Positions 13,718-62,033 of a stretch of DNA of 64,000 bases are shown here, one piece after another; the first letter of the stretch is position 1; each line of letters starts with the position of its first letter. The DNA lies in IMG/VR virus record IMGVR_UViG_3300027759_000045, positions 1 through 64,000 of that record; one strand, written 5' to 3'. The translations under genes and the position numbers were made by a program. The notes beneath the pieces were generated by a model. That model did no database searches. It was not told the origin of the DNA and saw only the letters and a program-made list of their open reading frames with translations.

Positions 13718-13739
13718 ATTAAGTGTTATAACTAATACT

Positions 13740-13979
13740 ATGCTAGACGACGACGAAAAACTAGATGAAGATATCCGTGCCCATGTGCTGAGTTTAATGT
13801 ATGTACTTTATGAGTACGGATTACGAGACGTTCACATGGGAGGCCTGTTGCGCATACTGGGAGTGCCAGATACCGTGGCCGCAGGGTTTGATGACCGGGT
13901 ATTGGGACTAGATGCTGACTTTGCTAAGTATATGAACGACATTCAGTCGGGCAGAGACTTGAGCCAAACACTACATTAA
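13740..13979 (+). CDS. Hypothetical protein
   Basis: ORF 5 nt after TAACTA. Confidence 0.6.
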   Translation: MLDDDEKLDEDIRAHVLSLMYVLYEYGLRDVHMGGLLRILGVPDTVAAGFDDRVLGLDADFAKYMNDIQSGRDLSQTLH

Positions 13980-14224
13980 TGACCGTACCCTCCTACAAAA
14001 GCAACACCGCACTTTATATCATAGCACTGAGAGATGATGATGCCAAAAGCAAACTCACTAAATGGGTAAACTCGCATTCCAATGCCAGTGCCCGAGTTGA
14101 GGAGCATCGTCTCCAAATTTACGATCAAAACACCTTGAACCTTTTTGTGGTATCCTGGACTCACGGTATCGGCAACCTTACAGTTTGGGATTGTTGGAAT
14201 CGGCGACATATCTACTTAGATTAG
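13979..14224 (+). CDS. Hypothetical protein
   Basis: TAATG coupling. Confidence 0.6.
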   Translation: MTVPSYKSNTALYIIALRDDDAKSKLTKWVNSHSNASARVEEHRLQIYDQNTLNLFVVSWTHGIGNLTVWDCWNRRHIYLD

Positions 14225-14253
14225 TTGACACACAGAAAAAAATGCTGTATACT
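14225..14253 (+). promoter_or_regulatory. Sigma70-type promoter
   Basis: TTGACA-17nt-TATACT. Confidence 0.7.
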
Positions 14254-14299
14254 GTACACAGTGTTAAGTAAACACGTTATAACTTTTAAAGGAACAAAA

Positions 14300-14491
14300 A
14301 TGACACAACATGAACAAATCGTAGCCGCTTATGAATCTTACCTCGCTGAAAACGAGAAGTTTACTGCCAAAGGTGTTAAGGCCGCTGCCGCTCGTGCCCG
14401 CAAAGCACTACAGGAAATGAGCAAAGGCATCAAAGAACGCCGCAAAGAAATCACAGCAGAAAAAGAAGCCCTGGCCACCACTGCCAAGTGA
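14300..14491 (+). CDS. Histone H1-like (Hc1-family) small basic protein
   Basis: KGVKAAAARARKALQEM...ERRK motif; AAGGA SD. Confidence 0.7.
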   Translation: MTQHEQIVAAYESYLAENEKFTAKGVKAAAARARKALQEMSKGIKERRKEITAEKEALATTAK

Positions 14492-14495
14492 TCCA

Positions 14496-14660
14496 ATGAA
14501 CACACGCACCGTGCAAGTGGTCGAAGATCCGGAAAATCCGGAAGAGCTACTTCTGGATCTAGGCAATGAATTATGTGCCGAACTTGGGTGGCAAGTCGGC
14601 GACACAGTTACATGGACAGATAACAAGGACGGCACATGGACTCTACACAAAAACAACTAG
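14496..14660 (+). CDS. AbrB/MazE-like small protein (54 aa; not in ORF track)
   Basis: ELLLDLGNELCAELGWQVGDTVTW swapped-hairpin pattern. Confidence 0.6.
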   Translation: MNTRTVQVVEDPENPEELLLDLGNELCAELGWQVGDTVTWTDNKDGTWTLHKNN

Positions 14661-15127: not shown

Positions 15128-15194
15128 CGGCAAAAGTGTTTCGTTTCAGCCCGGTTTGTCCGGGGATCTACAACCATTGAGTAAGTACAAGCCT

Positions 15195-15773
15195 ATGGAA
15201 ACAAACTTAATTTTTAAAAATATCGACTTCGTACCTTGGCTCTCGCGAGCGTTAAAGACTGTGGGATTGGCTGGAGTGGCAATCGCAGTAGTAGCAGTTT
15301 GCCAAGCACGACTAGACAACCTGCGACTAGCACAGAATAACATGCCGCCTGGATATGTCACTGCCGCAGAACAGACACGTCAGTTAGAATGCCTAACTCG
15401 CAACATCTATTGGGAAGCTGCATCAGAGCCATTTGAAGGCAAAGTAGCAGTGGCCCAGGTCACACTGAATCGCATGCAATCGGGCAAGTTTGCAGATTCA
15501 GTCTGTGGAGTTGTACATCAAAAGAATGTGTTCTACGAAAAGGTAGTATGCCAATTTTCCTGGTACTGCGAAGGCAATCACAAAGTAAAAGCCATACACA
15601 AACCCATGTGGCGCGAATCTGAAGAAGTGGCCAAGAAGGTCTTGCTTGAGGGATTTAGATTACCCAGTTTGCATAAAGCACTGTACTATCATGCAGACTA
15701 TGTAAACCCCGGATGGAAACATCCTAAAATTGAAAAAATTGGTCGTCATATTTTTTACGGAGAACGCTCATGA
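15195..15773 (+). CDS. Cell wall hydrolase (SleB/Hydrolase_2 family)
   Basis: CLTRNIYWEA.SEP..GKVAVAQV.LNR, CQFSW, YYHADYVNP.W, IGRHIFY. Confidence 0.9.
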   Translation: METNLIFKNIDFVPWLSRALKTVGLAGVAIAVVAVCQARLDNLRLAQNNMPPGYVTAAEQTRQLECLTRNIYWEAASEPFEGKVAVAQVTLNRMQSGKFADSVCGVVHQKNVFYEKVVCQFSWYCEGNHKVKAIHKPMWRESEEVAKKVLLEGFRLPSLHKALYYHADYVNPGWKHPKIEKIGRHIFYGERS

Positions 15774-16788: not shown

Positions 16789-16817
16789 TTGACTATTAAA
16801 TCTTGGTGTGCTATAAT
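16789..16817 (+). promoter_or_regulatory. Sigma70-type promoter
   Basis: TTGACT-17nt-TATAAT with extended TG. Confidence 0.75.
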
Positions 16818-16843
16818 ACTAGCATGATTAACAGAGTTCAATT

Positions 16844-18270: not shown

Positions 18271-18308
18271 AGAAAAAACGTTTATTAACCTATAGAGGAG
18301 AAAGTGAA

Positions 18309-18728
18309 ATGGCCGCAGACATGTGGGAAAAGCAAGAAGTGGTTCGTCTGCTCCGAGGAGCACCGGGCACACAATATCAAGAAGCAGATGACACAAACCG
18401 ACATGTCATACGTGACTGGGTACGAGGTCTGTTGCAACAACAACCTATCACAGTGACATTTACCAAAGCAGACGGCACAGATCGTAGTATGCGATGCACA
18501 CTGAACTGGGATTTGATTCCAGAAAAACCCCCAATGGCTTTTATATCACACAGTGCTTCTATTGTAGGGCGTGTTGATGGGCTAGTAACAGAAACCAAAA
18601 AATCACGAAAAGAACCAAAAGAACCCGATCCTGCTGTGATCAAAGTGTGGGATCTGGACGCCGGATCCTGGCGCAGTTTCCGAATGGACCGACTGAAGAA
18701 GATCACAGCAGAACTCAGTTTCGAATAA
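18309..18728 (+). CDS. WYL_2/Sm-like SH3-barrel phage protein
   Basis: VTFTKADGTDRSMRCTL and VWDLDAGSWRSFR; start 18309 (GAGGAG SD) or 18267. Confidence 0.7.
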   Translation: MAADMWEKQEVVRLLRGAPGTQYQEADDTNRHVIRDWVRGLLQQQPITVTFTKADGTDRSMRCTLNWDLIPEKPPMAFISHSASIVGRVDGLVTETKKSRKEPKEPDPAVIKVWDLDAGSWRSFRMDRLKKITAELSFE

Positions 18729-18738
18729 GTAATTGCTT

Positions 18739-18957
18739 ATGGCAAAAGAAGAAACAATCAACATGGAAGGTCGGGTGGAGGAGATTTTACCAGCTGCCAT
18801 GTTTAGAATTAAATTAGACAGTGTAGATAACATAGTGTTAGGGCATCTAAGCGGACGTATGCGTACCAACAACATCAAAGTGTTGCTGGGCGACCGCGTA
18901 GAAATTGAATTTACTCCGTATGATCTAACTCGTGGACGTATTACACGTAGGAAATAA
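18739..18957 (+). CDS. infA: Translation initiation factor IF-1
   Basis: [17 protein letters not shown]...[24 protein letters not shown]. Confidence 0.95.
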
Positions 18958-18960
18958 ATA
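18955..18960 (+). promoter_or_regulatory. TAAATA late-type box overlapping the infA stop codon
   Basis: TAAATA-caac-ATG. Confidence 0.6.
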
Positions 18961-18964
18961 CAAC

Positions 18965-19513
18965 ATGGAACTACGTGATCATATTAATCTGCTGGAAGCC
19001 AGCACTCGTCCAGCCAAACTGGAAACTACACCACTACCTTACGGTGAAAAAGACCTTGAGCCAGTGTTGAGTAAAGAAAGTTTAGAATACCATTATGGGC
19101 ATTTGGCCCGAGGCTATGCCAAGCGTTACAACGCAGGCGAAGGCAACGCAGATTTTAATCGTGCTGGTAGTTTTTTACACAACAAATTCTTCCCTCAGCT
19201 TAGGGCTCCCAAAGGCGCCAACAGACCAAAGGGCGCAGTGTTGGCACTGATAGAAGAACATTTTACCACTTACGAAGACTTCAAAGATGCAGTGAAAGAA
19301 ACTGCCATGAAAATCCAAGGCTCTGGATGGGTTTATCTCAGCACCAGTGGCACAATTAAAACAATTGCTAACCATGCAGTACGCACAGATATATGTGTGC
19401 TTATTGATTGGTGGGAACATGTGTGGGCACTGGACTACCAGTGGGACAAAGAAAAATACCTGGACAATATCTGGAAGATTATTGACTGGGATGTTTGTAA
19501 CGAAAGACTATAA
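18965..19513 (+). CDS. Fe/Mn superoxide dismutase
   Basis: LPY...LEP, EYHY, LHNKFF, GSGW, DWWEH metal ligands. Confidence 0.9.
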   Translation: MELRDHINLLEASTRPAKLETTPLPYGEKDLEPVLSKESLEYHYGHLARGYAKRYNAGEGNADFNRAGSFLHNKFFPQLRAPKGANRPKGAVLALIEEHFTTYEDFKDAVKETAMKIQGSGWVYLSTSGTIKTIANHAVRTDICVLIDWWEHVWALDYQWDKEKYLDNIWKIIDWDVCNERL

Positions 19514-19864: not shown

Positions 19865-19870
19865 TAAATA
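19865..19870 (+). promoter_or_regulatory. TAAATA late-type box
   Basis: Upstream of the structural operon. Confidence 0.6.
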
Positions 19871-19892
19871 CAATACCAGAGGACTCAAATAT

Positions 19893-21845
19893 ATGGCTCG
19901 TGAAATTATCAATGTAGGTGCGGCTCCGAATGACGGACAAGGCGATCCCATACGCACTGCGTTTACTAAAACAAACAACAATTTTGGAGAACTTTACTCC
20001 AGAATTCAAACTGTACCTCCTGTTGCGTTAACAGGCAGCGTAGGCGATGTTGCAGGCATGACTGCGTACGACGCAGAATATTACTATTATTGTTTTGCAA
20101 ATTACAACGGATCCAGTATAATTTGGAGAGAAGTTCCAAATGCCGCCCAGGCCAATATCACTGCTTTGTCGGCAACCGGCAACATCACAGCCAGTTATTA
20201 CATTGGTAATGGCAGCCAACTCACTGGGGTAATAGCCACCGCTGGTCCGGCTATTGTCAATGGCAATACCAATATTACCCTGGCCAACAACGGCAATGCA
20301 ACCATAACAATCAACGGTACATCAAACGTTGCTGTGTTCACAACCACAGGTGTTGCCATATCTGGTAATGTCACTGCTGGCACACTCAGTACAACCGGCA
20401 ATGTCAGTGCTGGAAACTTGCGCACAACTGGTGCTGTAAGTGCCACTGGTATTGTTTATTCAGCAGGTGGATTGGAGACAGCAGGCGCAGCCAGTGCAAC
20501 TGGTACTGTGACCGGCGGTAATGTTGTGACCGGAGGCTTAGTAAGTGCAACTGGAAATGCCACACTAGGAAATATCACAACCGGCGGCACAATAAGTTCT
20601 GTTGGAAATATCAACACATCTGCAAATGTTGTTGCTGTTGGAAACGTCTCTGGCACCTACATCATTGGCGACGGCGGCTATCTAAGCAATGTCACTGTGG
20701 TCAGCAACGTGGCTGTGACACAGATTGCCAATGGCACATCTATTCTGTCAGTTGCAGGGTCGGCTGGAAATATTGTGGTCAACGTCAATGGTGTTTCAAA
20801 TGTGGCACAGTTTGTACCCAATGGCATAGAAGTCCTGGGCAATGTAAATTCTGCAAATATCTATCTGACAGGAAGATTTGTAAGTGTTGGCAATGTCACT
20901 GGCAGTAACTTATTGGCCACTTCTGGTGTTATTGCCACCGGAAATGTCACCGGTGCGCATGTAAACTCAGATTTGACCATGTCGGCCTCGGGCAACATCA
21001 CCGGAGGCAACCTACGCACCGTTGGAAGTGTCAGTGCCACAGGTAATGTCACCAGCGGCAATGTTGTAACAGGTGGATTGATCAGTGCGACTGGAAATAT
21101 ATTTGGCAACATTATCAGTGCCACTGGCAATGTCAATGCTGCAGATGCATATCTGTCAGGACGATTTGTAAGTGTTGGTAACGTCACTGGCAGTAACTTA
21201 AGGGCTACTTCTGATGTTGTGGCCACTGGAAATGTCACTGGCGGCCAGGTAATCTCAAATTCAACCATGTCAGCCGTGGGCAACATCACTGGCAGCTATT
21301 TCTTTGGCAATGGTAGTCAATTAACTGGCGTAGTTGCCAACAGCACAGGCACCTTGGCCTCACTGAGTGTGACTGGAAACACAACCACTGGCAATTTATT
21401 CACCAGCGGTGCGGTAAGCGCCACCGGCAATGTGATTGGGTCATATTTTGTTGGTACTGCTACCTCAGCACAATACGCTGACATAGCAGAAAACTACACA
21501 GCAGATGCTGAGTATGAGCCTGGCACAGTGCTGGAATTTGGTGGTAACAAAGAAGTTACCATTGCCACAGACGAAACTGCACGAGTTGCAGGAATTGTAT
21601 CCACTCAACCTGCACATTTGATGAACAGCATGTTGAACAGTGAGCATGTGGTGGCAGTGGCTTTATTGGGCCGAGTTCCATGTCGAGTGCGTGGCACAGT
21701 TGTCAAAGGCGACATGCTTGTATCAACAGGCAACGGATATGCTCGAGCTAAACAAAACCCAATGATGGGCACTGTGATTGGCAAAGCGTTAGAAGCATCA
21801 ACTGGTGATCACAGTATTATTGAAGTTGTTGTTGGAAGACTATAA
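19893..21845 (+). CDS. Tail fibre protein with gp9/10-like N-terminus and C-terminal intramolecular chaperone-like domain
   Basis: INVGAAPNDGQGDPIRTAF; SATGNVTGGN repeats; YADIAENY..D..YEPGTV, VAL.GRVP. Confidence 0.8.
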   Translation: MAREIINVGAAPNDGQGDPIRTAFTKTNNNFGELYSRIQTVPPVALTGSVGDVAGMTAYDAEYYYYCFANYNGSSIIWREVPNAAQANITALSATGNITASYYIGNGSQLTGVIATAGPAIVNGNTNITLANNGNATITINGTSNVAVFTTTGVAISGNVTAGTLSTTGNVSAGNLRTTGAVSATGIVYSAGGLETAGAASATGTVTGGNVVTGGLVSATGNATLGNITTGGTISSVGNINTSANVVAVGNVSGTYIIGDGGYLSNVTVVSNVAVTQIANGTSILSVAGSAGNIVVNVNGVSNVAQFVPNGIEVLGNVNSANIYLTGRFVSVGNVTGSNLLATSGVIATGNVTGAHVNSDLTMSASGNITGGNLRTVGSVSATGNVTSGNVVTGGLISATGNIFGNIISATGNVNAADAYLSGRFVSVGNVTGSNLRATSDVVATGNVTGGQVISNSTMSAVGNITGSYFFGNGSQLTGVVANSTGTLASLSVTGNTTTGNLFTSGAVSATGNVIGSYFVGTATSAQYADIAENYTADAEYEPGTVLEFGGNKEVTIATDETARVAGIVSTQPAHLMNSMLNSEHVVAVALLGRVPCRVRGTVVKGDMLVSTGNGYARAKQNPMMGTVIGKALEASTGDHSIIEVVVGRL

Positions 21846-27072: not shown

Positions 27073-27077
27073 CCAAA

Positions 27078-27110
27078 CAGGTTGATCTTTACATCAACCT
27101 GCTGTACAAT
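27078..27110 (+). promoter_or_regulatory. Sigma70-type promoter overlapped by a 9-bp inverted repeat
   Basis: caggttgat-ctttac-atcaacctg; TTGATC-17nt-TACAAT. Confidence 0.6.
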
Positions 27111-27116
27111 TAACGC

Positions 27117-27365
27117 ATGGAACATCCGTTAATACCCAGTGTAGACTCGTTGACCATTGACGAGCTGGGCGGTAAAATATCAGAACTCAACAAAAAAATG
27201 GGCATTGCTCTCCGTATGGGCAATACCGAACTGGTACGTCAAATTCAAATGGCAATTGAAACGTATCAGACCAAATACACAGAAAAATCCACAGCTCTGT
27301 TCAACAAGCAAAACAACAAAGATGGATCAGGTCCCAACTTTGATCAAATCATCGACATATCATGA
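27117..27365 (+). CDS. Hypothetical protein
   Basis: 82 aa ORF. Confidence 0.65.
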   Translation: MEHPLIPSVDSLTIDELGGKISELNKKMGIALRMGNTELVRQIQMAIETYQTKYTEKSTALFNKQNNKDGSGPNFDQIIDIS

Positions 27366-31913: not shown

Positions 31914-31945
31914 CGGTTGACCATTAATTCCATTTCTAGTATAAT
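31914..31945 (+). promoter_or_regulatory. Sigma70 promoter related to the 11975/12216 repeats
   Basis: cggTTGACC-17nt-TATAAT. Confidence 0.75.
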
Positions 31946-31951
31946 AATAAT

Positions 31952-32557
31952 ATGAAGAAATACAAAAATTTAGATAAAGTAATCTTAGCCGATTGTGATG
32001 GTGTGTTGTTAGATTGGGAATGGGCGTTTAATGTTTGGATGCAGGAACACGGATTTGAAGAAGTTCCGGGTAGTAAACTCAACTATGACATGTCAATGCG
32101 ATATGGCATACCCAAAGAGCAGGTTAAAAAATTAATACGCTTGTTCAACGAATCGGCCGCAATTGGCTTTTTGCCTGCACTGCGTGATGCCATGTACTAT
32201 GTTAAACGACTGCATGAAGAACACGGATTTAGATTTCACTGTATCACCAGTTTGAGTCTAGATCCCAATGCACAAAAACTTCGTGAAATGAATCTAAACA
32301 AACTGTTTGGAACATCGGCATTTGAACGTATTGTGTGCTTGGACACTGGAGCCGACAAAGATGAAGTGCTACAAGAATATGAAGGTACTGGGTGTTACTG
32401 GCTTGAAGACAAAATTGAAAATGCCGAAGCCGGATACCGCGCAGGATTAAGGAGCCTTCTGGTAGAGCACGGACATAACATGCACCACTACCATGAAGGC
32501 ATCACAACTGTTAAAAACTGGAAAGAAATTTACCAGTTAATAACTGATCAAGAGTAA
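31952..32557 (+). CDS. HAD-family nucleotidase-like protein
   Basis: LADCDGVLLDW; WLEDK..NA. Confidence 0.8.
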   Translation: MKKYKNLDKVILADCDGVLLDWEWAFNVWMQEHGFEEVPGSKLNYDMSMRYGIPKEQVKKLIRLFNESAAIGFLPALRDAMYYVKRLHEEHGFRFHCITSLSLDPNAQKLREMNLNKLFGTSAFERIVCLDTGADKDEVLQEYEGTGCYWLEDKIENAEAGYRAGLRSLLVEHGHNMHHYHEGITTVKNWKEIYQLITDQE

Positions 32558-33279: not shown

Positions 33280-33455
33280 GGTACTTCTCCAAAGTTGAGG
33301 GTTTTGTCTGACAGCAACATGCTGTCCTGAGTATTTAGGCTATAACTTTTTGAATTCTCTGGGCGGTGATAACGGACTTTTACGGCATAAGTATTAGGCT
33401 AACCGAGACACAATTCCAAAATACCCCACACAGTGTCAATGCCATAAATAACTGT

Positions 33456-41983: not shown

Positions 41984-41988
41984 GCAAT

Positions 41989-42001
41989 TACTTAGTAAAT
42001 A
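41989..42001. promoter_or_regulatory. Back-to-back late-type boxes (TAAGTA minus, TAAATA plus)
   Basis: Each lies 5 nt from its ATG. Confidence 0.6.
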
Positions 42002-42006
42002 GCACT

Positions 42007-42801
42007 ATGACACAACGTATTTTAATCATGGGCTTACCAGGAGCCGGCAAAACATATCTGGCACAACACATTGTAGATCACTTACAAGCAGAAAAGAAAC
42101 GGGTAGGTTGGCTCAACGCTGACGATGTACGTAAAAAGTACAACGACTGGGACTTTAGCGAAGCAGGCCGTATTCGACAAAGTCTACGTATGAGAGAACT
42201 GGCAGACACAATGGCCGATGTTGATTATGTGATCTGCGACTTTGTTGCTCCATTGGTTGAGATGCGCAACAACTTCAAAGCAGACTGGACTGTGTGGGTT
42301 GATACCATTGACAAAGGTAGATACGAAGACACTAACCGGGCATTTGTTCCTCCTGAACAGTATGATTTTAGAATCACAGAACAGCACAGTGAGAAATGGG
42401 GCGAGTTTATTGCCGCGCATATCTTAGACAACCGTCGTAGACCGGTGTTTGACTGGCAAAAGGAAACTGTTGAACAACTTGGCAGATGGCAACCTTGGCA
42501 TGCAGGTCACCGTGCGTTGTTTGACAGACTGATACAAAAAACAGGGCAAGTATGCATTATGATTCGTGATTGTCAAGGATGGCAAGGTTCAAATCCATTT
42601 GCAATTGATCAGGTCAAAAACGCTATCAAACGAGATTTAGACATGATGTATCAAGGTCAATACGAAATACTGGTAGTTCCTAATATTACTCATATTGGAT
42701 ACGGTCGCGGAGTAGGCTACACAATGGCAGAAGAAAAATTCGACGAATCTATTACAAACATATCCGGGACAGAGATCCGCAAAAGCCTGGGATTAAAGTA
42801 A
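42007..42801 (+). CDS. Adenylylsulfate-kinase-like domain fused to an HxGH nucleotidyltransferase domain
   Basis: MGLPGAGKT, LNAD.VR..DFS..GR, FVAP..MR; GRWQPWHAGH, THIGYGR, ISGTEIR. Confidence 0.75.
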   Translation: MTQRILIMGLPGAGKTYLAQHIVDHLQAEKKRVGWLNADDVRKKYNDWDFSEAGRIRQSLRMRELADTMADVDYVICDFVAPLVEMRNNFKADWTVWVDTIDKGRYEDTNRAFVPPEQYDFRITEQHSEKWGEFIAAHILDNRRRPVFDWQKETVEQLGRWQPWHAGHRALFDRLIQKTGQVCIMIRDCQGWQGSNPFAIDQVKNAIKRDLDMMYQGQYEILVVPNITHIGYGRGVGYTMAEEKFDESITNISGTEIRKSLGLK

Positions 42802-51020: not shown

Positions 51021-51666
51021 TGTCAGTAAAGATCGGTTGTTTTACGATCAATACCGATACTGCATGACAGGTGAACTGCGTGAAGCAGGTTGTATGCGCA
51101 AACTTGATCATGCCGCAATTGATCATGTTGTGTCAGTGCGCAAAGAATGGACAGGTCGATTACATGATTACTATTCTTCAAATCGTGCTATCACAGATGA
51201 TGTAGTAAAAAATTTACACAACATGTGTGACGTGTTGATCAATACTAAACGGCAGCATAAATTAATAATAGAGCATGGCCAAATACGTGTGTACGCCAAT
51301 GAGCCCGAACTGTTCACAGAGATAATTGATCATGTACCAGGCCTTAAATATCCAGCATACACACAGGCTGTGATTGATCGCCCCAGAGACTCTATTCGTC
51401 TTAAAGAATCTGCATACTCACATCGCACATACCTGCGATCAGTTGTGGTAAACGATCAACAAAAACGATCAATTGGTCAACTACTAAGGAATCAAGAAGG
51501 TATCAGATTAAGTCCTGGATTAAAGTCCTGGGCATCAACTATCAGCTGGCGCGGCTGGACTGAATCGTATTACTTTGTGGATCACACGGATACAGGCTGG
51601 ATGACCATGTTGAGTTTGGTATATCCTGGCCTGATAAAAAACACAATTCAAATCATAAAAGCATAA
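50992..51666 (+). CDS. Hypothetical protein
   Basis: 224 aa ORF. Confidence 0.65.
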   Translation: MINLHPTFNNVSKDRLFYDQYRYCMTGELREAGCMRKLDHAAIDHVVSVRKEWTGRLHDYYSSNRAITDDVVKNLHNMCDVLINTKRQHKLIIEHGQIRVYANEPELFTEIIDHVPGLKYPAYTQAVIDRPRDSIRLKESAYSHRTYLRSVVVNDQQKRSIGQLLRNQEGIRLSPGLKSWASTISWRGWTESYYFVDHTDTGWMTMLSLVYPGLIKNTIQIIKA

Positions 51667-51676
51667 GTAATACACT

Positions 51677-51841
51677 ATGGCAAAAATACACGAAGAAATA
51701 GTTGTGATCAAACTATCAAAATTGGTCCGAGATACAGATGCTGGCACCGAAATTGCCACAGCTGACATTGTTACAGCCCTACAAAGCGTGGCAGAAGAAC
51801 TGGCTGGCACAGGTGTTGTGGTAGAAGCGGAACGAGCATAA
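51677..51841 (+). CDS. Hypothetical protein (54 aa; not in ORF track)
   Basis: MAKIHEEIVVIKLSKLV...; TAAGTA-7nt-ATG. Confidence 0.6.
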   Translation: MAKIHEEIVVIKLSKLVRDTDAGTEIATADIVTALQSVAEELAGTGVVVEAERA

Positions 51842-52670: not shown

Positions 52671-52686
52671 GCATAAATATGCTATA

Positions 52687-53442
52687 ATGAATTATCTAGT
52701 AATTTACCCAGGACGTTTTCACCCATTCCACAAAGGTCACAAGGCCAGTTATGATTGGCTGAACAAACAGTTTAGCAACGACAGTGTTTTTATTGCCACC
52801 AGTGGTGTACAAGCACCTGTTACAAGTCCGTTCAGTTATTCCGACAAAGTAATGATGATGACCAAACTGGGCATTCCTGCTGGTCGCATTGTCAACGTAA
52901 AAAATCCATATCAAGCTGTTGAAATTACCAGTGCTGTTCCCGATGAAGAAAAGGCCAACACAGTATTGGTGTTTGCTGTGAGTGCTAAAGATGCAGAACG
53001 TTTTAATTTTGCTCCTAAAAAAGATGGCACCCCTGGGTATCTACAACCATTGCCTAAAAATAAAAAGTCAATAAAGCCCATGACCAAACATGGCTACGTT
53101 GTGATCACTCCCACTATCAACTTTCGAGTAAATGGCGTAGATGCCAACTCTGCATCCGAAATACGCAAAATGTATCTCAAAGGCAACGACCGTGACAAAG
53201 ATCAAGTGATTGCTGATTTATATGGTCAACCAGATTTGGCAATTCGCGCAGTGTTTGATAAGAAATTGGGCATTTCGGAACAGGCCCAAAACTATATTCG
53301 CGAAGCCAGGCAATTTGGCAATGTCAAGGTTGTGGAATGGCTGGAGAATGTGTTACAATTAGAAAAACAAGTAAACAGCGTCCACGCTGATTTCGCACAC
53401 ATCAACCCTGATTACATAGACGAAAAAACATATAATCGATAA
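52687..53442 (+). CDS. HxGH cytidyltransferase-like protein
   Basis: YPGRFHPFHKGH, SPF, SASEIR. Confidence 0.75.
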   Translation: MNYLVIYPGRFHPFHKGHKASYDWLNKQFSNDSVFIATSGVQAPVTSPFSYSDKVMMMTKLGIPAGRIVNVKNPYQAVEITSAVPDEEKANTVLVFAVSAKDAERFNFAPKKDGTPGYLQPLPKNKKSIKPMTKHGYVVITPTINFRVNGVDANSASEIRKMYLKGNDRDKDQVIADLYGQPDLAIRAVFDKKLGISEQAQNYIREARQFGNVKVVEWLENVLQLEKQVNSVHADFAHINPDYIDEKTYNR

Positions 53443-55267: not shown

Positions 55268-55290
55268 ACTGCTAGTTTAATTCCGATTCC

Positions 55291-55317
55291 AAAAGCCACT
55301 TTGCCCAGTGGCTTTTT
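55291..55317 (+). terminator. Rho-independent terminator
   Basis: aaaagccact-ttgccc-agtggcttttt. Confidence 0.85.
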
Positions 55318-55340
55318 CATTTGCGCTAAATATTACAATC

Positions 55341-58300
55341 ATGAATATTTCTGAACTAGATTCCTACAACCTTGCTGATGCTGTTAAATTTAATGAACAG
55401 TTGAACCCACGTATCTGGCAGGGCAATAAAATGCGCCCACAGGTGCGGGCCACGCTGTTAAAAATTGCTGAAGACTTTAAACAAAGTTTGGGGATTGGCG
55501 ATTTGAACGTCAAAGACATCACCTTGTCCGGCAGCAATGCTGGTTACACATATACTCCACATAGTGACATAGATCTACACCTGGTGGTGGACCTACCCGA
55601 AGCAGATGTGAGTGAAGTGTATCGCGAGTTGTTTGATGCTAAAAAGTTTCAGTACAACGAAACACACAATATCAAAATTGGTGGCTACGATGTAGAACTC
55701 TATGTGGAAAACGCCAACAAATCGGCAGTGAGTCAAGGCATATTCAGTGTGCTGAATAACGACTGGATCAACATTCCACTGAAAAAACGTTCTACAATAA
55801 ACGACACTGCGGTCAAGAGCAAGTACGATGTGATCAAGCATCGCATTGAATCAGCAGTGAAATCTGGCAGTCTAAAACGACTGACCAACACTGCTGCCAA
55901 GATTAAAAAGATGCGTCAAGCCGGACTTGATCAGCACGGTGAACTGGGTCCAGAAAACATTGCGTACAAGATGTTGCGTTCACAAGGTGTTATACAACAA
56001 CTGTATGATGCCAGAACCAAGGCCAAAGATCGAGCACTGAGTCTTAAAGAACGGTCTATTGAAATTGATAAACCATTTAAATTCACCTACGGATTCAAAG
56101 CCACAGAAGATGTTGGTGCTTCATGGGATGGAGTAAGTCCCACAACACAGATGTTCTTGAATGAAGAACCCAAGTCAGATGAAGATATACTCACAGACTT
56201 TGTGGAGTTTTGTGTTGCAGAACTAGAGATTGAACAGATGCCACGTGTTCGCCTGCGTAAAGATCCGCAGTGGCCTGTGCGGCACAAGACGTTTGGTCGC
56301 TACAACGACAATGAAAAAATGTTAGAAGTGGCCTGGGGTCAACGACACATCATGGATGTGTTGCGCACAGTGGCACATGAACTCACACACAAGCATCAAC
56401 ACGAACGTGATGGCAGTGATATGGGATCTGACGCAGGTGAAACTGGCAGTCCTTACGAAAACGAAGCCAATGCTCGTGCCGGTGTACTCATGCGTGACTA
56501 TGCCAAACTGCACCCGGAACATTTTGCCGCCGGCCAAACAGATGATTTAGCAGAAGCATCAGGATACATCCCCACAAAGAAGCAGGCAAAGGACCCACGC
56601 TTTAGCATGGCCTTGACTCGAGATGTACGTCCAGGTGCGGTGGGTAAGGAAGCAAACAAACTAGGACTAAAGACTGACAATCAAGGACATCCAGGATTGT
56701 TAATGACTGGTTTGGCCAATGCACTGCGTGAGTTTAAAGAAACTGGGCAGATGCCGCTGATATACGAAGATGAGTTGTTTGAAATCAACATGAGCACAGG
56801 TAGCTTACGTCGCGAAGCTGCCAAGACCGGCGCTATTGCTGGCATGGAATTTGAAATGATTGTGCCCAATGTGGAAGGTGGCGACGATGATGGCCAACAG
56901 GAACCTGATTATGAGTATGACGAAGGTGTTAGTAGTATCCAAGACGCATATGACTTCTTCTACGACGGTGATTACAACAGCCGAGGTGATGTTACTCGAC
57001 TGCGTGAGAAGATGCAAAATGAATATTACGAATGGCTAGGTGAGTCGTTTGATACTCGTTGGGACGGTGACGAGTCAGAGTTTGTGTACAACTACCTTAA
57101 AGAAAACGCCAGTGCAGATGAAATTGCAGAAATACTAAGCACAGAACCCGACGCAGACGGTGAATACCCAGAGCCTGATAAACAGGCATATCGCGATGCC
57201 ACAGAAAAAGTTGTCGAAGAAAGCTACGGCAACTACTGGTATGATGCAGCACGTGAAAGTGCGCAGGAAGATTTTAATCAGAATGCAGACCTAGAATCAG
57301 AATGGTTAGAAGATCGAGACTTGAACCGCATGTCAGACATTGAAAATGAATACAACATGAGTTGGCCGCACTGGCAGTCAATGGGCAATGGTGGCGAAGC
57401 CAGCATCGAAGATGTTGCCCAAGAGTTTGAAAATGCCATAGACCGTCCTGTTCAAGCCAGCGGTAACTATCACTCCGGCGGCGTGCGAAGACCCAGCCCA
57501 ACAGCACAGCACTATCTAGTAGAACCTGATGGCAGTTTAGAAGCCAATGACAGCGATGATGTAGGCCTAGAGTTTGTAAGTCCACCTTTGCCTATTGACG
57601 ATATATTAAGTGACTTGAACAAAGTCAAGGCCTGGGCCAAACAATACGGATGCTACACCAACGATTCAACAGGCCTACACATCAACATCTCAGTGCCGGA
57701 CTACAGTAGAGAAAACTTGGACTTTGTTAAACTAGCTCTGTTAATGGGCGACGAGTATGTGCTGGACAACTTTGGTCGTGCTGGCAATACCTACGCTAAA
57801 TCAGCAATGAAATTAGTACGCGATCAAGTGCGCACTAAACCCGACGAAGCTGAACGTTTGTTGGATAAAATGAAAGGCAACCTGGACAGTTTGGCAAGCA
57901 AGGCCATACACTCGGGCGTGACCAGCAAGTACACCAGTATCAACACCAAGGACGGACATATTGAATTCCGCTCACCCGGTGGTGACTGGTTAGATGACAA
58001 CTTTGACAAGATTGAAAACACATTATTGCGTTTTACAGTGGCCATGAGTGCGGCTCTAAATCCAGAAATGTATCGCGAAGAATACCTGAAGAAACTGTAC
58101 AAGTTGTTGACACAGGACAACAAGGGTTCTGACACCATCAAGTACTTCAGTGAATATGTAGCAGGCAAGATTCCTGCAGCCGCACTGCGTAGTTTTGTTA
58201 AGCAGGCACAGTTGGAACGCAAGTTGAAGAAAGATCCAACAGGCGGTGAAAAATATTGGTGGAGTGTTCGTAGTCCTGGCAATAGCAATGCTGGTATAGA

Positions 58301-59072: not shown

Positions 59073-59073
59073 C

Positions 59074-60060
59074 ATGCGAGCCAGTGAATTTTTAATCGAA
59101 TATAGAGATAGACTATTACAATATGTCAAGAGTCTGTTGCCCACTTGGCCTGAATATGTTCTCAAAGATTGGTTGGTGCCCAACAAAGGTGACTTTAGTA
59201 ATTTACCAGATACTGAACTTAAAAATGGTATAATGGAAAAATTAAAAGGACAAGGTCTTTCTCCGAGTACTAAATGGCAACTTGTACCCGATATGAAGTT
59301 TACAATGGACATGTTTGAGCCAATGACTACACAGCGATTGGTTGGTCGTGCAGGTGGCAAAAGTGATTTAGGCATGAAAATTCCAAAGGATGCCGAACGA
59401 CACGCTACACAAGCCGCCCTGGCACAACAGCAAGGCGGTGTGCGTAAAGAACCTGTGCTACTAATAAAAACAGCCAATGGATATGAACTATTAGAAGGTT
59501 GGCATAGAACAATACAGCACTTTGCTCGGTATCCTAATGGATATACAGGCCCTGCGTATGTGGCAGTGGCACAAGGTCAGCAAGGTGTGGCGGAAGGCTC
59601 GGAACATTACAATGGCATTGAAATCTCCATGGAAAAGGAAGATGATGAAATTATGGTAAAGGCAATAATGCCAGGCGGTCGCGAACTTGGACATGTATTA
59701 TTTGTACAAGAGGGTGATTACTTAATGCCACAAGATTTAGAAGTTGATGAACGCTATCAAGGCCAAGGCATTGCCGCCACAATGTACGACTATATAAAAA
59801 GCAAAGGATACAAGATACGCCGCAGTGGTCAACAAACAGATGCAGGTGCAGGCTTCTGGGACAAACATCGTCCTGAGCAAAACGTTTGGGAAAACTTTGC
59901 GGATGGCAAAAATCCTGGACGCAAAGGCTTGAGCAAGCGAGTGGGAATTCCTAAAAAAGCCACCTTGGGCAAACTGGAAAAGATTGCAAAGTCCAGCACA
60001 GGCGAACGCCGCAGGATGGCACAGTGGCAACTAAATATGAGACGAGGTAAGAAAAAATGA
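59074..60060 (+). CDS. Multi-module protein: ParB-like + GNAT acetyltransferase + basic tail
   Basis: EPVLL..LLEGWHR; V...YQGQGIA..MY, QT.AG..FW. Confidence 0.65.
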   Translation: MRASEFLIEYRDRLLQYVKSLLPTWPEYVLKDWLVPNKGDFSNLPDTELKNGIMEKLKGQGLSPSTKWQLVPDMKFTMDMFEPMTTQRLVGRAGGKSDLGMKIPKDAERHATQAALAQQQGGVRKEPVLLIKTANGYELLEGWHRTIQHFARYPNGYTGPAYVAVAQGQQGVAEGSEHYNGIEISMEKEDDEIMVKAIMPGGRELGHVLFVQEGDYLMPQDLEVDERYQGQGIAATMYDYIKSKGYKIRRSGQQTDAGAGFWDKHRPEQNVWENFADGKNPGRKGLSKRVGIPKKATLGKLEKIAKSSTGERRRMAQWQLNMRRGKKK

Positions 60061-60381
60061 GATCAAGTGAATTCGTATTTGAAAAGTGGAGCGAAAAATA
60101 CAAAAGCAGTATTAACTGTAGCCACCCTCGAGGCTTTTCACAAAAAGCACACTGTGCCGGTAAAAACAAACAGAATGAATCAGTTGAGATGGAAATGGTG
60201 TGCGAAGATTGTGGCATGTGTGAAACACATGGCAATGTAAATGAAATTAAAAAAGGTGCTAAAGACTCAAATGGCTATACCCGTTGCTGGCCTGGCAAAC
60301 ATGCTGAAGGCACCAAAAAGGGCAAGAATGGCGGACAAGTTCGCAACTGTGTGCCCAATGAATCGCAAGGTGTGGCGGAAG
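59580..60381 (+). repeat. 17-bp direct repeat GCAAGGTGTGGCGGAAG (59580-59596 and 60365-60381)
   Basis: Identical copies, both encoding QGVAE at module junctions. Confidence 0.8.
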
Positions 60382-60794
60382 AATTATCAAAAGAGTTTGA
60401 TCTTATTGAAAGTATCATCGAAGGTATTGCTGAGCACAATGGTGTAGATGCCGAAACAGTATGGGAGGACCTAGAAAGCCTGACTGAAGATGAACTGTAT
60501 GCGTTTGCTGTGACTTCGCAACTGAACGAAGACTGGCAAAAGGCCAACAAGCGAGACAAGACCGATGGCATGAGCCAAAAGGCTGTGAATGCTTATCGCA
60601 GAGAGAATCCCGGATCGAAACTAAAGACTGCTGTGACCACTAAACCTTCGAAGCTAAAGAAAGGCTCTAAAGCCTCCAAGCGCAGATCAAGCTATTGCTC
60701 ACGCAGCCGTGGACAAATGAAAATGCATAGTATCTCATGTGCCAAAACTCCAGACAAAGCCATCTGCAAAGCACGACGTCGTTGGAACTGCTGA
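60057..60794 (+). CDS. Putative virion internal multi-module protein
   Basis: MRSSEFVFE leader; SINCSHPRGFSQKAHC, CWPG..NCVP, YRRENPGSKL..SYC.RS modules. Confidence 0.6.
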   Translation: MRSSEFVFEKWSEKYKSSINCSHPRGFSQKAHCAGKNKQNESVEMEMVCEDCGMCETHGNVNEIKKGAKDSNGYTRCWPGKHAEGTKKGKNGGQVRNCVPNESQGVAEELSKEFDLIESIIEGIAEHNGVDAETVWEDLESLTEDELYAFAVTSQLNEDWQKANKRDKTDGMSQKAVNAYRRENPGSKLKTAVTTKPSKLKKGSKASKRRSSYCSRSRGQMKMHSISCAKTPDKAICKARRRWNC

Positions 60795-60982
60795 TGAAGG
60801 TCAAAGAAGTCGTTAAAAGTGCAAAGCAATGGACTGCCAAGGTGCGTGTTCAGAATCCTGGATATGTGGGCTGGGTCGATGCAGTGGTCTGGGCTCCTAA
60901 CACTCATGTGGCCAGACAAATGATCAAAGCACAGTACCGAATTGAAGATTGGCACGTGGGCTCAATCAAAGAACTGCGTTAA
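60794..60982 (+). CDS. Hypothetical protein
   Basis: TGATG coupling; MKVKEVV. Confidence 0.55.
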   Translation: MKVKEVVKSAKQWTAKVRVQNPGYVGWVDAVVWAPNTHVARQMIKAQYRIEDWHVGSIKELR

Positions 60983-61683
60983 CTACGTAAGCGAGCCAGT
61001 CCTACTAGTCTAAATACACCAAGCCACATCCATCCTGCATCAAATTCAAACCAACGACGACTCAGTCTAGGGTTAGCAGGATCCAGATGATGGTTATTAT
61101 GCAGGCATTCCCCACCAACAACAATATCCCAAGGCACAATGTTTCTGCTGTGATCTTTAGTTTCGCCATTTCTATATCCCCACCAATGTCCAATGCCGTT
61201 GATAACTCCGGCCGCCCACCAAGGTATCCATGCCATTTGTATACCCCAAATCAGCACTCCCCACACACCAAACAACGCAACATCGATCGCAAGCATTAAT
61301 AAGATGCCTAGTCTGCTGTGGCGAGTGTAAACGTTGCGTTCAATCCAGTCATCCGGTGTGCCTGCGCCATACTGTGCAACCATCTCTGCGTCTCGGCTGG
61401 CTGAGTGATACAGGCCTGCACCTTTAAACAATACACGCCCAATTCCGTATACGTGTGGGCTGTGCGGATCACCTTCTGCATCACTGAATCTGTGATGCTT
61501 GCGATGGATAGCTACCCATTGCTTTGTAACCATGCCTGTGGTGAGCCATAGCCAGGCTCGCATGAAGTGTTCCAGTACAGGAGTAAAAACGATACCGCGA
61601 TGTGCTTGGCCACGGTGTAGGTACAATGTAACACAGATTATGGTAATGTGTGTGACTATTAAGGTATAGATAAGTTCTGTCAT
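60979..61683 (-). CDS. Membrane fatty-acid (delta-9-type) desaturase
   Basis: His boxes HRGQAH, HRKHH, HNNHH; GDPHSP. Confidence 0.9.
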   Translation of the reverse strand: MTELIYTLIVTHITIICVTLYLHRGQAHRGIVFTPVLEHFMRAWLWLTTGMVTKQWVAIHRKHHRFSDAEGDPHSPHVYGIGRVLFKGAGLYHSASRDAEMVAQYGAGTPDDWIERNVYTRHSRLGILLMLAIDVALFGVWGVLIWGIQMAWIPWWAAGVINGIGHWWGYRNGETKDHSRNIVPWDIVVGGECLHNNHHLDPANPRLSRRWFEFDAGWMWLGVFRLVGLARLRS

Positions 61684-61751
61684 AGTGTATTTAAGTAAAA
61701 CTATTGCCAAATTGCTAATTTAACTATACAGTTAACGGCACTAAATACAGC

Positions 61752-62033
61752 ATGAAACAGTTTATTCGTGTGCTATGTGACGTTGATTGTGCTTGGGCAG
61801 GTACTGAGCCAGTGTATCGCGTTTATGTTGATGACGAATTATTTGCTGAAAGAACCTGGCGCTGGCAAGATGTGTATCTAGAAGAAATGATACAGATCGA
61901 AGCAGAGCCGGGAGAATATGTAATCAGTTATGAACTTGTTGATTCTCCCGGTGCCACGCTACGTGTGTCAAACATGCGTGTGGATTATGGTCCCGGAAGA
62001 ATTAAAGGAAATCTACTAAAGATACTCACATGA
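61752..62033 (+). CDS. Hypothetical late protein
   Basis: YRVYVDDELFAERTW; TAAATA-4nt-ATG. Confidence 0.65.
   Translation: MKQFIRVLCDVDCAWAGTEPVYRVYVDDELFAERTWRWQDVYLEEMIQIEAEPGEYVISYELVDSPGATLRVSNMRVDYGPGRIKGNLLKILT

What the first reader, a model, noticed from the sequence alone, without database searches (positions are those of the whole stretch)
13729..61752. Promoter boxes 4-8 nt from the ATG across the window suggest a leaderless-mRNA programme; the phage also encodes IF-1
Seen: TAAATA-N4-8-ATG at 18955, 33445, 41996, 52674, 55327, 61742 and 61693(-). TAAGTA/TAACTA variants occur at 13729, 15182, 18726, 51664 and 41994(-), and sigma70 -10-N6-ATG at 12001, 27105 and 31940. None has an SD between box and ATG. 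Established: T4 late promoters are TATAAATA -10-only elements with the start site a few nt downstream. Inference: many transcripts begin at or near the AUG, which could bypass host SD-dependent control; a role for the phage infA (18739) is speculative.
Basis: partly seen in the sequence, partly recalled or inferred. Interest (0 to 1): 0.6.

Follow-up and report, generated by a model that had tools for sequence, protein, structure and literature searches.

The report
Promoters abutting start codons in jumbo phage
In this 347-kb lake-water jumbo phage and its relatives, about one gene in eight has a promoter box sitting only 4-8 bases before its ATG with no ribosome-binding site, so these genes are most likely expressed as leaderless mRNAs, an unusual layout for a T4-type late transcription system.

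Summary
Genome-wide, 38 of 204 TAAATA hexamers (19%, background 1.6%, P~1e-28) lie 4-7 nt before an ATG that opens 60 or more codons.

TAAATA spacing to ATG is bimodal. At 4-8 nt there is no Shine-Dalgarno (SD) sequence. At 17-26 nt an AGGA/GGAG SD sits in the leader.

Host-type TTGAC-N17-TATAAT promoters split the same way: N5-6-ATG without SD, or 19-34 nt leaders with SD.

The genome encodes a gp55-family late sigma factor (outside the window) and a genuine IF-1.

In IMG/VR relatives, box and spacing are kept at orthologous genes while the spacer sequence drifts. Four related genomes show the same enrichment. T4 does not.

Divergent gene pairs only 23-37 nt apart hold two back-to-back boxes, leaving no room for leaders.

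Best reading: early and late promoters are placed so that transcription starts at or within a few nt of the AUG, in about 50 of about 420 genes.

Not shown: transcription start sites (TSS). The only RNA run gave short contigs.

The TAACTA variant is not supported. TAAGTA is supported. A role for IF-1 remains speculative.

This is a new variant of known kinds: T4-type late promoters, and phiYS40-like leaderless phage genes.

The parts
18955..18967 (+). TAAATA box (18955-18960; its TAA is the infA stop codon), 4-nt spacer, ATG 18965 of a 182-aa gene
   Evidence: In about 40 distinct relatives the infA stop is part of TAAATA-N4-7-ATG, with varying spacers.
33445..33458 (+). TAAATA-N5-ATG (ATG 33456) of a 196-aa virion structural protein, in a divergent intergenic region
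   Evidence: phrog_12928, E = 5e-28.
37072..37084 (+). TAAATA-N4-ATG (ATG 37082, 208 aa). The box lies inside the end of the upstream gene.
41981..42009 (.). Divergent pair with a 23-nt intergenic region. Minus strand: ATG 41983, N5, TAAGTA at 41994-41989. Plus strand: TAAATA at 41996-42001, N5, ATG 42007 (kinase-like, 264 aa).
   Evidence: Orthologues of the minus-strand gene keep TA(T)AA(A/G)TA, with N5 in 7 of 10, N8 in one and N10 in two. phrog_10255.
52674..52689 (+). TAAATA-N7-ATG (ATG 52687, 251 aa, cytidylyltransferase-like)
55286..55343 (+). Terminator-like hairpin with a T run, then TAAATA at 55327-55332, an 8-nt spacer and ATG 55341 of a 1243-aa protein (nucleotidyltransferase and amidoligase domains)
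   Evidence: The box is 100% conserved in 25 distinct relatives, with spacing of 4-10 nt in 24 of them.
61681..61754 (.). Divergent pair. Minus strand: TAAATA at 61693-61688, N4, ATG 61683 (234 aa). Plus strand: TAAATA at 61742-61747, N4, ATG 61752 (93 aa).
18726..18957 (+). TAAGTA (18726-18731; its TAA is the stop of the upstream gene), N7, then infA (18739-18957, 72 aa, IF-1)
   Evidence: PF01176, E = 1e-19. TAAGTA-N4-9-ATG lies before infA in about 25 distinct relatives, and TAAATA in two.
15182..15197 (+). TAAGTA-N7-ATG (ATG 15195, endolysin-like, 192 aa)
   Evidence: Genome-wide TAAGTA enrichment is 6 of 86.
51664..51679 (+). TAAGTA-N7-ATG (ATG 51677, 54 aa). The TAA is the stop of the upstream gene.
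   Evidence: This is the weakest of the TAAGTA sites: a short ORF, with no comparative check.
13729..13742 (+). TAACTA-N5-ATG downstream of a terminator-like hairpin (13694-13713). Not supported as a promoter of this class.
   Evidence: TAACTA is at background, 1 of 115. Hairpin.
11978..12015 (+). Sigma70-type promoter: TTGACC, N17, TATAAT at 12001-12006, N6, ATG 12013 (66 aa)
27082..27119 (+). Sigma70-type promoter: TTGATC, N17, TACAAT at 27105-27110, N6, ATG 27117 (82 aa)
31917..31954 (+). Sigma70-type promoter: TTGACC, N17, TATAAT at 31940-31945, N6, ATG 31952 (201 aa, phrog_420)
   Evidence: About 35 distinct orthologous loci keep TTGAC...TATAAT-N5-7-ATG, mostly N6.
19865..19895 (+). Leadered comparison class: TAAATA, 22 nt containing an SD, ATG 19893. 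The same class occurs at 26096 (to 26125), 28467 (to 28497), 42833 (to 42859), 54335 (to 54365) and 60032 (to 60057).
   Evidence: This class has a conserved A four nt after the box (66% A), taken as the likely start site.

Best explanation
The phage uses two promoter types.

- Early genes use host sigma70-type promoters (TTGAC(C)-N17-TATAAT).
- Late genes use a minus-10-only TAAATA box, with TAAGTA as a weaker variant. This is the conserved core of the T4 late promoter TATAAATA and is read by host RNA polymerase carrying the phage's gp55-family sigma factor.

Each promoter type comes in two layouts.

- Leadered layout: a leader of about 12-30 nt carries an AAGGAG-type Shine-Dalgarno sequence.
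- Abutting layout: the box sits directly against the coding sequence (TATAAT-N5-6-ATG, or TAAATA-N4-8-ATG). Transcription then starts on the A of the AUG or at most a few nt before it.

The abutting layout should give leaderless or near-leaderless mRNAs for about 50 of about 420 genes. These include infA itself, an endolysin-like gene, several virion proteins and auxiliary enzymes. Such mRNAs would be translated through 5'-terminal-AUG recognition (the 70S/IF2/fMet-tRNA route), not through SD pairing.

Shown here: the sequence architecture, its statistics, its conservation across the clade, the gp55 homologue and IF-1.

Inferred: the start sites, the timing classes and the mode of translation.
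For: 1. Position-specific enrichment. TAAATA is the top non-SD hexamer at 4-8 nt (30 genes) and the top hexamer at 17-26 nt (31 genes) before starts. Without any gene calls, 38 of 204 sites precede an ORF-opening ATG, against 1.6% background.

2. Bimodality. The short-spacing class has SD energies near zero. The long-spacing class has AGGA/GGAG. Sigma70-type promoters show the same split: 9 with N5-6 and no SD, about 30 with 19-34 nt leaders and an SD.

3. Inferred start site.
- Leadered late promoters have a conserved A four nt after the box (66% A). This coincides with the A of the ATG in the N4 class.
- Under T4 geometry the box spans -13 to -6 (PMC2988020), so N5 puts +1 on the A. N4 and N5 are the modal spacings (11 and 15 sites).
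- For sigma70, N6 puts +1 on the A. Leadered and unleadered early promoters share the same YAT(A/G) initiator sequence.

4. A gp55-family sigma factor lies at genome 188230-189222: phrog_12791 E = 5e-73, T4 gp55 phmmer E = 2e-9.

5. Divergent genes only 23-37 nt apart carry two back-to-back boxes, leaving no room for a leader.

6. Conservation at orthologous genes.
- The 55341 gene: box kept in 25 of 25 distinct relatives, with spacing 4-10 nt in 24.
- The infA stop/next-gene junction: about 40 relatives.
- The 31952 gene: about 35 relatives keep TATAAT-N5-7-ATG.
- TAAGTA and TAAATA interchange at orthologous sites.
- Spacers and flanks drift throughout.

7. Four related genomes of 320-364 kb have 33-42 TAAATA-N4-7-ATG against 7-16 for the reversed pattern. 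T4 has 16 against 20.

8. TAAATA is depleted inside genes: sense strand 58 observed against 77 expected, antisense 40 against 89. Control hexamers are mostly near expectation.

9. ATG is essentially the only start codon in this class. The 5' coding regions are slightly less structured and more A-rich.
Against: - No 5' ends were observed. The single metatranscriptome holds only 48-258-nt contigs on the stretch.
- Spacings of N7-N10 imply 2-6-nt leaders. In E. coli and Caulobacter such leaders reduce leaderless-type initiation (stated from general knowledge, not tested here).
- Many of these genes could also be read from upstream read-through transcripts.
- The 5' TA of the T4 octamer is not conserved.
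- No gp45-like clamp was detected with T4 gp45 or PF02916. That family search rang in no control genome, so it is uninformative.
- The host is unknown, so its ability to translate leaderless mRNAs is unknown.
- My gene starts come from a home-made caller, and 109 genes without SD remain unexplained.
Confidence: 0.7

Rival explanations
1. The boxes are real promoters, but the adjacent ATGs are translated mainly from longer read-through or polycistronic transcripts, by coupling, 70S scanning or SD-independent 30S binding. The short-leader transcripts would then be minor or poorly translated by-products of genome compaction.
For: - 19 of the short-spacing sites follow a same-strand gene.
- 75 other genes without SD sit within -10 to +5 nt of an upstream stop, so coupling is common in this genome.
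- Spacing varies from N4 to N10 among orthologues. That is looser than a strict 5'-AUG requirement would predict.
Against: - 16 or more sites are in divergent pairs with no upstream same-strand gene.
- Several follow terminator-like hairpins, for example 55286-55320.
- ATG is used exclusively.
- Spacing is invariantly N6 for the sigma70 class across about 35 relatives.
Confidence: 0.14
2. TAAATA acts at the RNA level, not as a promoter. It would be either an AU-rich SD-independent translation enhancer (S1 binding) or a cleavage site for a processing endonuclease that trims mRNAs close to the AUG.
For: The motif is AU-rich and lies just 5' of start codons. SD usage is modest overall. A 5'-monophosphate is reported to enhance translation of leaderless mRNAs (PMC9031893).
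Against: - The second class, at 17-26 nt, has its own SD and does not fit a ribosome-binding role.
- Back-to-back boxes on opposite strands in 23-27-nt gaps fit promoters.
- Depletion is strongest on the antisense strand of genes.
- A gp55 homologue is present, and the motif equals the T4 late-promoter core.
- The sigma70-type promoters show the identical layout.
Confidence: 0.05
3. The pattern is chance or an artefact: AT-rich intergenic sequence plus TAA stop codons of upstream genes lying next to the following ATG.
For: At 18955, 18726 and 51664 the TAA of the box is indeed the upstream stop codon.
Against: - Only 4 of about 40 TAAATA sites use the TAA as a stop.
- Same-composition permutation hexamers give 0-6 against 30.
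- P is about 1e-28.
- The ATA after the stop is conserved in about 40 relatives.
- T4, which is more AT-rich, shows no enrichment.
Confidence: 0.01
4. Add-on claim, not exclusive of the best explanation: the phage IF-1, possibly together with the phage initiator-type tRNA, is a functional part of the programme and raises translation of the 5'-AUG phage mRNAs.
For: - IF-1 is real and conserved in at least 275 viral contigs of this clade.
- It is itself preceded by TAAGTA-N7-ATG, and its stop codon is built into the next gene's TAAATA box.
- A review reports that IF1, IF2 and extra fMet-tRNA stimulate leaderless translation in vitro while IF3 inhibits it (PMC9031893).
- A tRNA with the C1xA72 mismatch typical of bacterial initiators lies at genome 110361-110435.
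- Phage phiYS40 combines leaderless late mRNAs with altered host IF2 and IF3 levels (PMC3594737).
Against:
- IF-1 also stimulates canonical and 70S-scanning initiation.
- IF-1 is reported in many huge phages without any link to leaderless mRNAs (PMC7162821).
- All relatives examined have both features, so there is no informative contrast apart from T4.
Confidence: 0.2

Closest known systems
T4-family late promoters (TATAAATA read by gp55-RNA polymerase, activated through gp33 and the gp45 clamp)
   Same: - A gp55-family sigma factor is encoded.
- The element is minus-10-only, with the same TAAATA core.
- There is no conserved minus-35 element.
- Late-type genes lie downstream: virion proteins and an endolysin-like gene.
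- Variation at -13/-12 is already known within the T4 family (PMC2988020).
   Different: - The first two bases (TA) are not conserved here.
- Half of the boxes abut the ATG, at 4-8 nt. T4 itself shows no such enrichment (16 against 20 in the control).
- gp45 was not detected and gp33 was not sought.
Thermus phage phiYS40 (leaderless middle and late transcripts)
   Same: A large lytic phage in which most middle and late mRNAs lack a leader, and in which initiation-factor balance is shifted during infection (as summarised in PMC3594737).
   Different: - phiYS40 infects a Deinococcus-Thermus host, where minus-10 boxes adjacent to ORFs are a common native pattern (PMC12340547).
- It uses host sigma-type promoters and changes host IF2 and IF3 levels.
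- Here the late promoters are gp55-type, only about 12% of genes are affected, early genes are affected as well, and the phage carries its own IF-1.
Bacterial genomes with leaderless transcription (Mycobacterium, Deinococcus; the GeneMarkS-2 class with a promoter box at a short fixed distance from starts)
   Same: A minus-10 box 5-8 nt before the start codon, no SD, and a bimodal distribution of signal-to-start distances (PMC6028130, PMC4007540, listed).
   Different: This is a virus. It uses two different sigma specificities, and the feature is conserved across a clade of uncultured freshwater jumbo phages.
Jumbo phages with mapped transcription start sites (phiKZ, AR9)
   Same: Large genomes with temporal promoter classes.
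   Different: phiKZ showed no leaderless transcript (PMC8244752). AR9 5' UTRs are 26-491 nt (PMC5312081). Both use phage multisubunit RNA polymerases, not gp55.
Translation genes of huge phages (IF1, IF3, S1, S21)
   Same: Phage-encoded IF-1 has been reported before (PMC7162821).
   Different: That work does not mention leaderless mRNAs. Here infA sits between two box-ATG junctions that are conserved in relatives.

Membership tests
T4-type (gp55-dependent) late promoter system | Phage encodes a gp55-family late sigma factor | tested here: met
   Genome 188230-189222 (L002:2230-3222): phrog_12791 E = 5.5e-73, phrog_234 E = 9e-23. T4 gp55 phmmer E = 1.8e-9.
T4-type (gp55-dependent) late promoter system | Conserved TATA-box core at the minus-10 position upstream of late genes | tested here: met
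   TAAATA is enriched 12-fold before ORF-opening ATGs and is the top hexamer at 17-26 nt. It is conserved in orthologous positions.
T4-type (gp55-dependent) late promoter system | Full 8-bp consensus TATAAATA (TA at -13/-12) | tested here: not met
   The two bases before TAAATA are not conserved: A 44% at -1 and no T preference at -2. Some relatives do have TATAAATA or TATAAGTA. Variation at -13/-12 is known in the family.
T4-type (gp55-dependent) late promoter system | No minus-35 element | tested here: met
   Only weak AT-richness at -27 to -20. No position upstream of the box exceeds 0.55 bit.
T4-type (gp55-dependent) late promoter system | Sliding clamp (gp45) and co-activator (gp33) partners | tested here: inconclusive
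   A gp44-like clamp loader was found at window 30008-30928. T4 gp45 gave no hit. PF02916 gave no hit and rang in no control genome. gp33 was not searched.
Leaderless mRNA | Transcription start at the start codon, or within 5 nt of it | not testable with these tools
   The only RNA run is kept as contigs of 48-258 nt, which cannot show 5' ends.
Leaderless mRNA | Promoter minus-10 box at a short fixed distance from the start codon, with no SD | tested here: met
   TATAAT-N5-6-ATG in 9 genes; TAAATA-N4-7-ATG at 38 sites. SD energies are near 0.
Leaderless mRNA | AUG as the start codon | tested here: met
   ATG occurs 39 times at the position. No other triplet exceeds 7, and GTG and TTG are not among the twelve commonest.
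Sigma70-type promoter | TTGACA-like and TATAAT-like hexamers 16-18 bp apart | tested here: met
   Matches of 11 out of 12 at 31917-31945 and elsewhere. There are 69 sites against 42 +/- 6.6 in shuffles over 12000-31999. Lists and conservation.
Bacterial initiation factor IF-1 (infA) | Single S1-like IF-1 domain of about 72 aa, scoring above the Pfam gathering threshold | tested here: met
   PF01176: 70.4 bits against a cut-off of 30.2, residues 8-71 of 72. 51-63% identity to bacterial IF-1 of many phyla.
Bacterial initiation factor IF-1 (infA) | Acts on ribosomes, and specifically favours leaderless mRNAs | not testable with these tools
   There is only literature context.

The most novel reading that the evidence does not exclude
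A whole clade of uncultured freshwater jumbo phages may run a dedicated SD-independent expression channel. In this reading, gp55-type late promoters and host-type early promoters are positioned to produce 5'-AUG mRNAs. The phage-encoded IF-1 and initiator-type tRNA then shift host ribosomes towards these mRNAs. This would give the phage a private translation route that is insensitive to host or defence interference with SD-dependent initiation.
Probability: 0.15. Interest if true: 0.8.

Novelty: new variant of a known kind. Interest (0 to 1): 0.6.

Why it matters
- Transcription start sites are mapped for very few phages. The jumbo phages studied so far (phiKZ, AR9) showed no leaderless mRNAs.
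- Here, sequence statistics and conservation across a clade predict that about 12% of the genes of a T4-related jumbo phage lineage are expressed without leaders, from two different sigma specificities.
- If confirmed, this extends leaderless gene expression to gp55-type late transcription.
- It supplies a set of natural minimal promoter-plus-start cassettes of 13-38 bp.
- It would improve start-codon annotation in huge-phage metagenomes, because SD-based callers mis-start such genes. Examples are 33456 and 42007, where the longest ORF begins at an upstream GTG.
- It gives a testable context for why huge phages carry IF-1 and initiator tRNAs.

Tried and rejected
- **Phage identity.** Megablast of 4.5 kb against GenBank phages found no match. 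tblastn found only distant T4-like and jumbo relatives. The phage is uncultured: an IMG/VR record with direct terminal repeats, estimated 100% complete.
- **RNA evidence.** One lake metatranscriptome (X1) held 6% of the sampled words. It gave nine short contigs, three of them exact (54781-55038, 55475-55625, 58295-58445). They carry no information on 5' ends or strand, and could even be carried-over DNA.
- **Host inference from IF-1.** The best bacterial matches are 51-63% identical and spread over many phyla, so they give no host signal. The genome search 'relatives' is not available for virus records.
- **gp45 clamp.** T4 gp45 and PF02916 found nothing, and the family search rang in no control genome, so this is uninformative.
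- **TAACTA variant (13729).** At background frequency, so rejected.
- **ORF 3216-3674 with TAAATA-N3-ATG.** Rejected as a gene. tRNA-Met (3264-3339), with its own TTGACA-N17-TATAAT promoter, lies inside it.
- **Stop-codon confound.** Rejected.
- **Weak gp55-like tblastn hit at 18468-18653** (E = 0.01). PHROGs assigns that ORF to other families, not to a sigma factor.
- **Literature.** No paper in the held library links gp55-type late promoters to leaderless mRNAs. Absence from this library is not proof. The original phiYS40 paper is not held, so I cite a review.
- **Tools left unused.** The large profile search, structure prediction and complex prediction were not used, because no claim here rests on them. 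Only genetic code 11 was used.

Full report
**What the window is**

The window is the first 64 kb of a single-contig virus record of 346,856 bp. It has 43.6% GC and direct terminal repeats, and is estimated to be complete. It has no close match among GenBank phages. It has only distant protein similarity to T4-like and jumbo phages.

My own self-trained ORF caller gives 419 genes, 340 of them on the plus strand, covering 94% of the genome. The genome carries 27 tRNA genes and a tmRNA-like gene at 102-116 kb. It also carries a ClpA/B-like ATPase and a genuine IF-1 at window 18739-18957 (PF01176, 70.4 bits against a cut-off of 30.2).

**Checking the observation**

Genome-wide, the distance from TAAATA to the next gene start is sharply bimodal. 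About 30 genes have 4-8 nt and about 31 genes have 17-26 nt.

- At 4-8 nt, TAAATA is as frequent as the best Shine-Dalgarno (SD) hexamers.
- At 17-26 nt it is the most frequent hexamer of all.
- Hexamers of the same composition give 0-6 genes. The exceptions are ATAAAT and AAATAT, which overlap the shifted box and give 15 and 12.

A test that uses no gene calls gives the same answer. Of 204 TAAATA sites on both strands, 38 are followed at 4-7 nt by an ATG that opens 60 or more codons. The figure for random hexamers is 1.6%, giving a binomial P of 1e-28.

- ATG fills that position 39 times. No other triplet does so more than 7 times.
- TAAGTA is modestly enriched: 6 of 86, P = 0.003.
- TAACTA is not enriched: 1 of 115.
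- The TAA of the box is the upstream gene's stop codon in only 4 of about 40 cases.

**The two layouts**

Genes with the box at 4-8 nt have SD duplex energies near zero. Genes with the box at 17-26 nt almost all carry AGGA or GGAG in the leader.

Sigma70-type promoters show the same split. They have a strikingly conserved extended consensus around TTGACC-N17-TATAAT.

- Nine have N5-6-ATG and no SD. In the window these include 12001 and 31940. The 27105 site has the same N6 layout but a TTGATC -35 box, so my pattern did not list it.
- About thirty have leaders of 19-34 nt with AAAGGAG.
- The independent consensus scan finds the same high-scoring sites. It counts 69 against 42 +/- 6.6 in shuffles over 12000-31999.

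**Where transcription should start**

In leadered late promoters, the base four nt after the box is A in 66% of cases. This has nothing to do with a start codon, so it is the likely +1. In the N4 class that position is the A of the ATG.

In T4 the 8-bp box occupies -13 to -6. TAAATA-N5 then puts +1 on the A of the ATG. N4 and N5 are the most frequent spacings, with 11 and 15 sites.

For sigma70 promoters, N6 puts +1 on the A. Leadered and unleadered early promoters share the same initiator, YAT(A/G), at that position. Sites with N7-N10 would carry leaders of 2-6 nt.

**Independent support for promoter function**

1. A gp55-family late sigma factor is encoded at genome 188230-189222: phrog_12791 E = 5.5e-73, T4 gp55 E = 1.8e-9. 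A gp44-like clamp loader is at window 30008-30928.
2. Divergent gene pairs separated by only 23, 27 and 37 nt contain two back-to-back boxes, each 4-6 nt from its own ATG. They are 41983(-)/42007(+), 100379(-)/100407(+) and 266911(-)/266949(+). There is no room for leaders.
3. TAAATA is depleted inside genes: sense strand 58 against 77 expected, antisense 40 against 89. Control hexamers are mostly near expectation. This is what selection against spurious promoters predicts.

**Comparative evidence from IMG/VR relatives**

- Orthologues of the 1243-aa gene at 55341 were found in 25 distinct upstream contexts, at 43-100% amino-acid identity. All have TAAATA, and 24 have it 4-10 nt from the ATG. 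The spacers differ, and the upstream sequence is either a hairpin or an upstream gene.
- The infA stop codon is embedded in TAAATA-N4-7-ATG of the next gene in about 40 distinct relatives.
- infA itself is preceded by TAAGTA-N4-9-ATG in about 25 relatives, and by TAAATA in two. More distant relatives instead start infA at TTG behind an SD-like AAAGGA.
- Orthologues of the minus-strand gene at 41983 keep TA(T)AA(A/G)TA, with N5 in 7 of 10, N8 in one and N10 in two.
- Orthologues of the early gene at 31952 keep TTGAC...TATAAT-N5-7-ATG, mostly N6, in about 35 distinct contexts.
- Four related genomes of 320-364 kb have 33-42 TAAATA-N4-7-ATG against 7-16 for the reversed pattern. T4 has 16 against 20.

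The feature therefore belongs to this clade and not to T4 itself.

**Extent and content**

By my calls, the 419 genes divide as follows.

| Class | Genes |
|---|---|
| Recognisable SD | 184 |
| Late box at 3-9 nt, no SD | 37 |
| Minus-10-like box at 5-7 nt, no SD | 14 |
| Start within -10 to +5 nt of an upstream stop (probable coupling) | 75 |
| No SD, unexplained | 109 |

Predicted leaderless genes include virion structural proteins, an endolysin-like protein, a kinase, radical-SAM enzymes, sugar-nucleotide enzymes, a homing endonuclease, infA and many proteins of unknown function. The large, presumably abundant structural genes tend to have the leadered layout with a strong SD.

**What is not shown**

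No start site was observed. The one RNA run, a lake metatranscriptome, gave nine short contigs on window 53201-59200, three of them exact. These show only that the phage or a near-identical one is present in that library.

The host is unknown. IF-1 is 51-63% identical to proteins from many phyla.

The link to IF-1 is untested. A review states that IF1, IF2 and extra initiator tRNA stimulate leaderless translation in vitro, whereas IF3 inhibits it. The genome also has a tRNA with the C1xA72 mismatch typical of bacterial initiators. However, IF-1 also serves canonical initiation, and it has been reported in many huge phages without reference to leaderless mRNAs.

**Comparison with what is known**

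- The promoter type matches the T4 late system in its sigma factor, its core motif and its lack of a minus-35 element. It lacks the conserved 5' TA, and it differs in its placement against the ATG.
- The closest functional precedent is Thermus phage phiYS40. Its middle and late mRNAs are mostly leaderless, and it alters host IF2 and IF3 levels.
- Bacterial precedents are Deinococcus-Thermus and mycobacteria.
- The jumbo phages with mapped start sites show no leaderless mRNAs.
- I found no paper in the held library that links gp55-type promoters with leaderless mRNAs.

**Verdict**

The promoter identity is well supported. The leaderless or near-leaderless outcome is the most likely reading (about 0.7) but awaits 5'-end mapping. 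The IF-1 connection remains a hypothesis (about 0.2). This is a new variant of known kinds.

Noticed in passing
genome 110361-110435 (outside the window; G000:C1): tRNA(CAT) with a C1xA72 mismatch at the top of the acceptor stem and a CGCGGGG 5' end, typical of bacterial initiator tRNA-fMet. Two further tRNA(CAT) genes lie at window 3264-3339 and genome 107787-107862.
   Followed up: partly
genome 110821-111310: ARAGORN calls a permuted tmRNA-like gene with a 27-residue tag peptide, inside the 27-tRNA cluster at 102.8-116.4 kb.
   Followed up: no
window 3195-3340: tRNA-Met has its own TTGACA-N17-TATAAT promoter. The 152-codon ORF 3216-3674 that overlaps it is probably spurious, although a TAAATA lies 3 nt before its ATG.
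   Followed up: partly
window 12219-12280; genome 268.3-268.9 kb, 305.0-306.9 kb, 342.6-343.0 kb: More than ten near-identical early promoter-plus-leader cassettes stand in front of small genes (59-130 aa). They share an extended consensus around TTGACC...TATAAT, followed by a conserved leader ending in AAAAGGAG. They look like a repeated early-gene module.
   Followed up: no
genome 188170-188232 (L002): The gp55-like sigma gene starts with GTG. It is preceded by a TTGACA-N16-TATAAT promoter whose minus-10 box overlaps a TAAATA box (TATAATAAATA). This suggests host-sigma expression followed by self-activation.
   Followed up: no
window 55341-59072: A 1243-aa protein combines nucleotidyltransferase, a weak M78-peptidase-like region and amidoligase domains. 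It is conserved in at least 48 viral contigs. Its function is unknown.
   Followed up: no
window 48732-51020: A full-length ClpA/ClpB-like double AAA+ chaperone is encoded by the phage, behind a leadered sigma70-type promoter.
   Followed up: no
L172-L220 (relatives of infA): In more distant relatives infA begins with TTG, directly after or overlapping an upstream gene that ends with an SD-like AAAGGAT. The same gene therefore switches between a box-ATG layout and a coupled TTG layout within the clade.
   Followed up: partly
window 29468-29947 and genome 266156-266911: Two genes resemble heptose kinase/adenylyltransferase. Glycosyltransferase, cytidylyltransferase-like and radical-SAM genes are also present, which suggests a phage-encoded sugar-nucleotide or modification pathway.
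   Followed up: no
window 54781-55038, 55475-55625, 58295-58445: Exact-match contigs occur in a 2017 lake-water metatranscriptome (run X1). The phage or a near-identical strain was therefore present in that sample, and possibly transcribed.
   Followed up: partly
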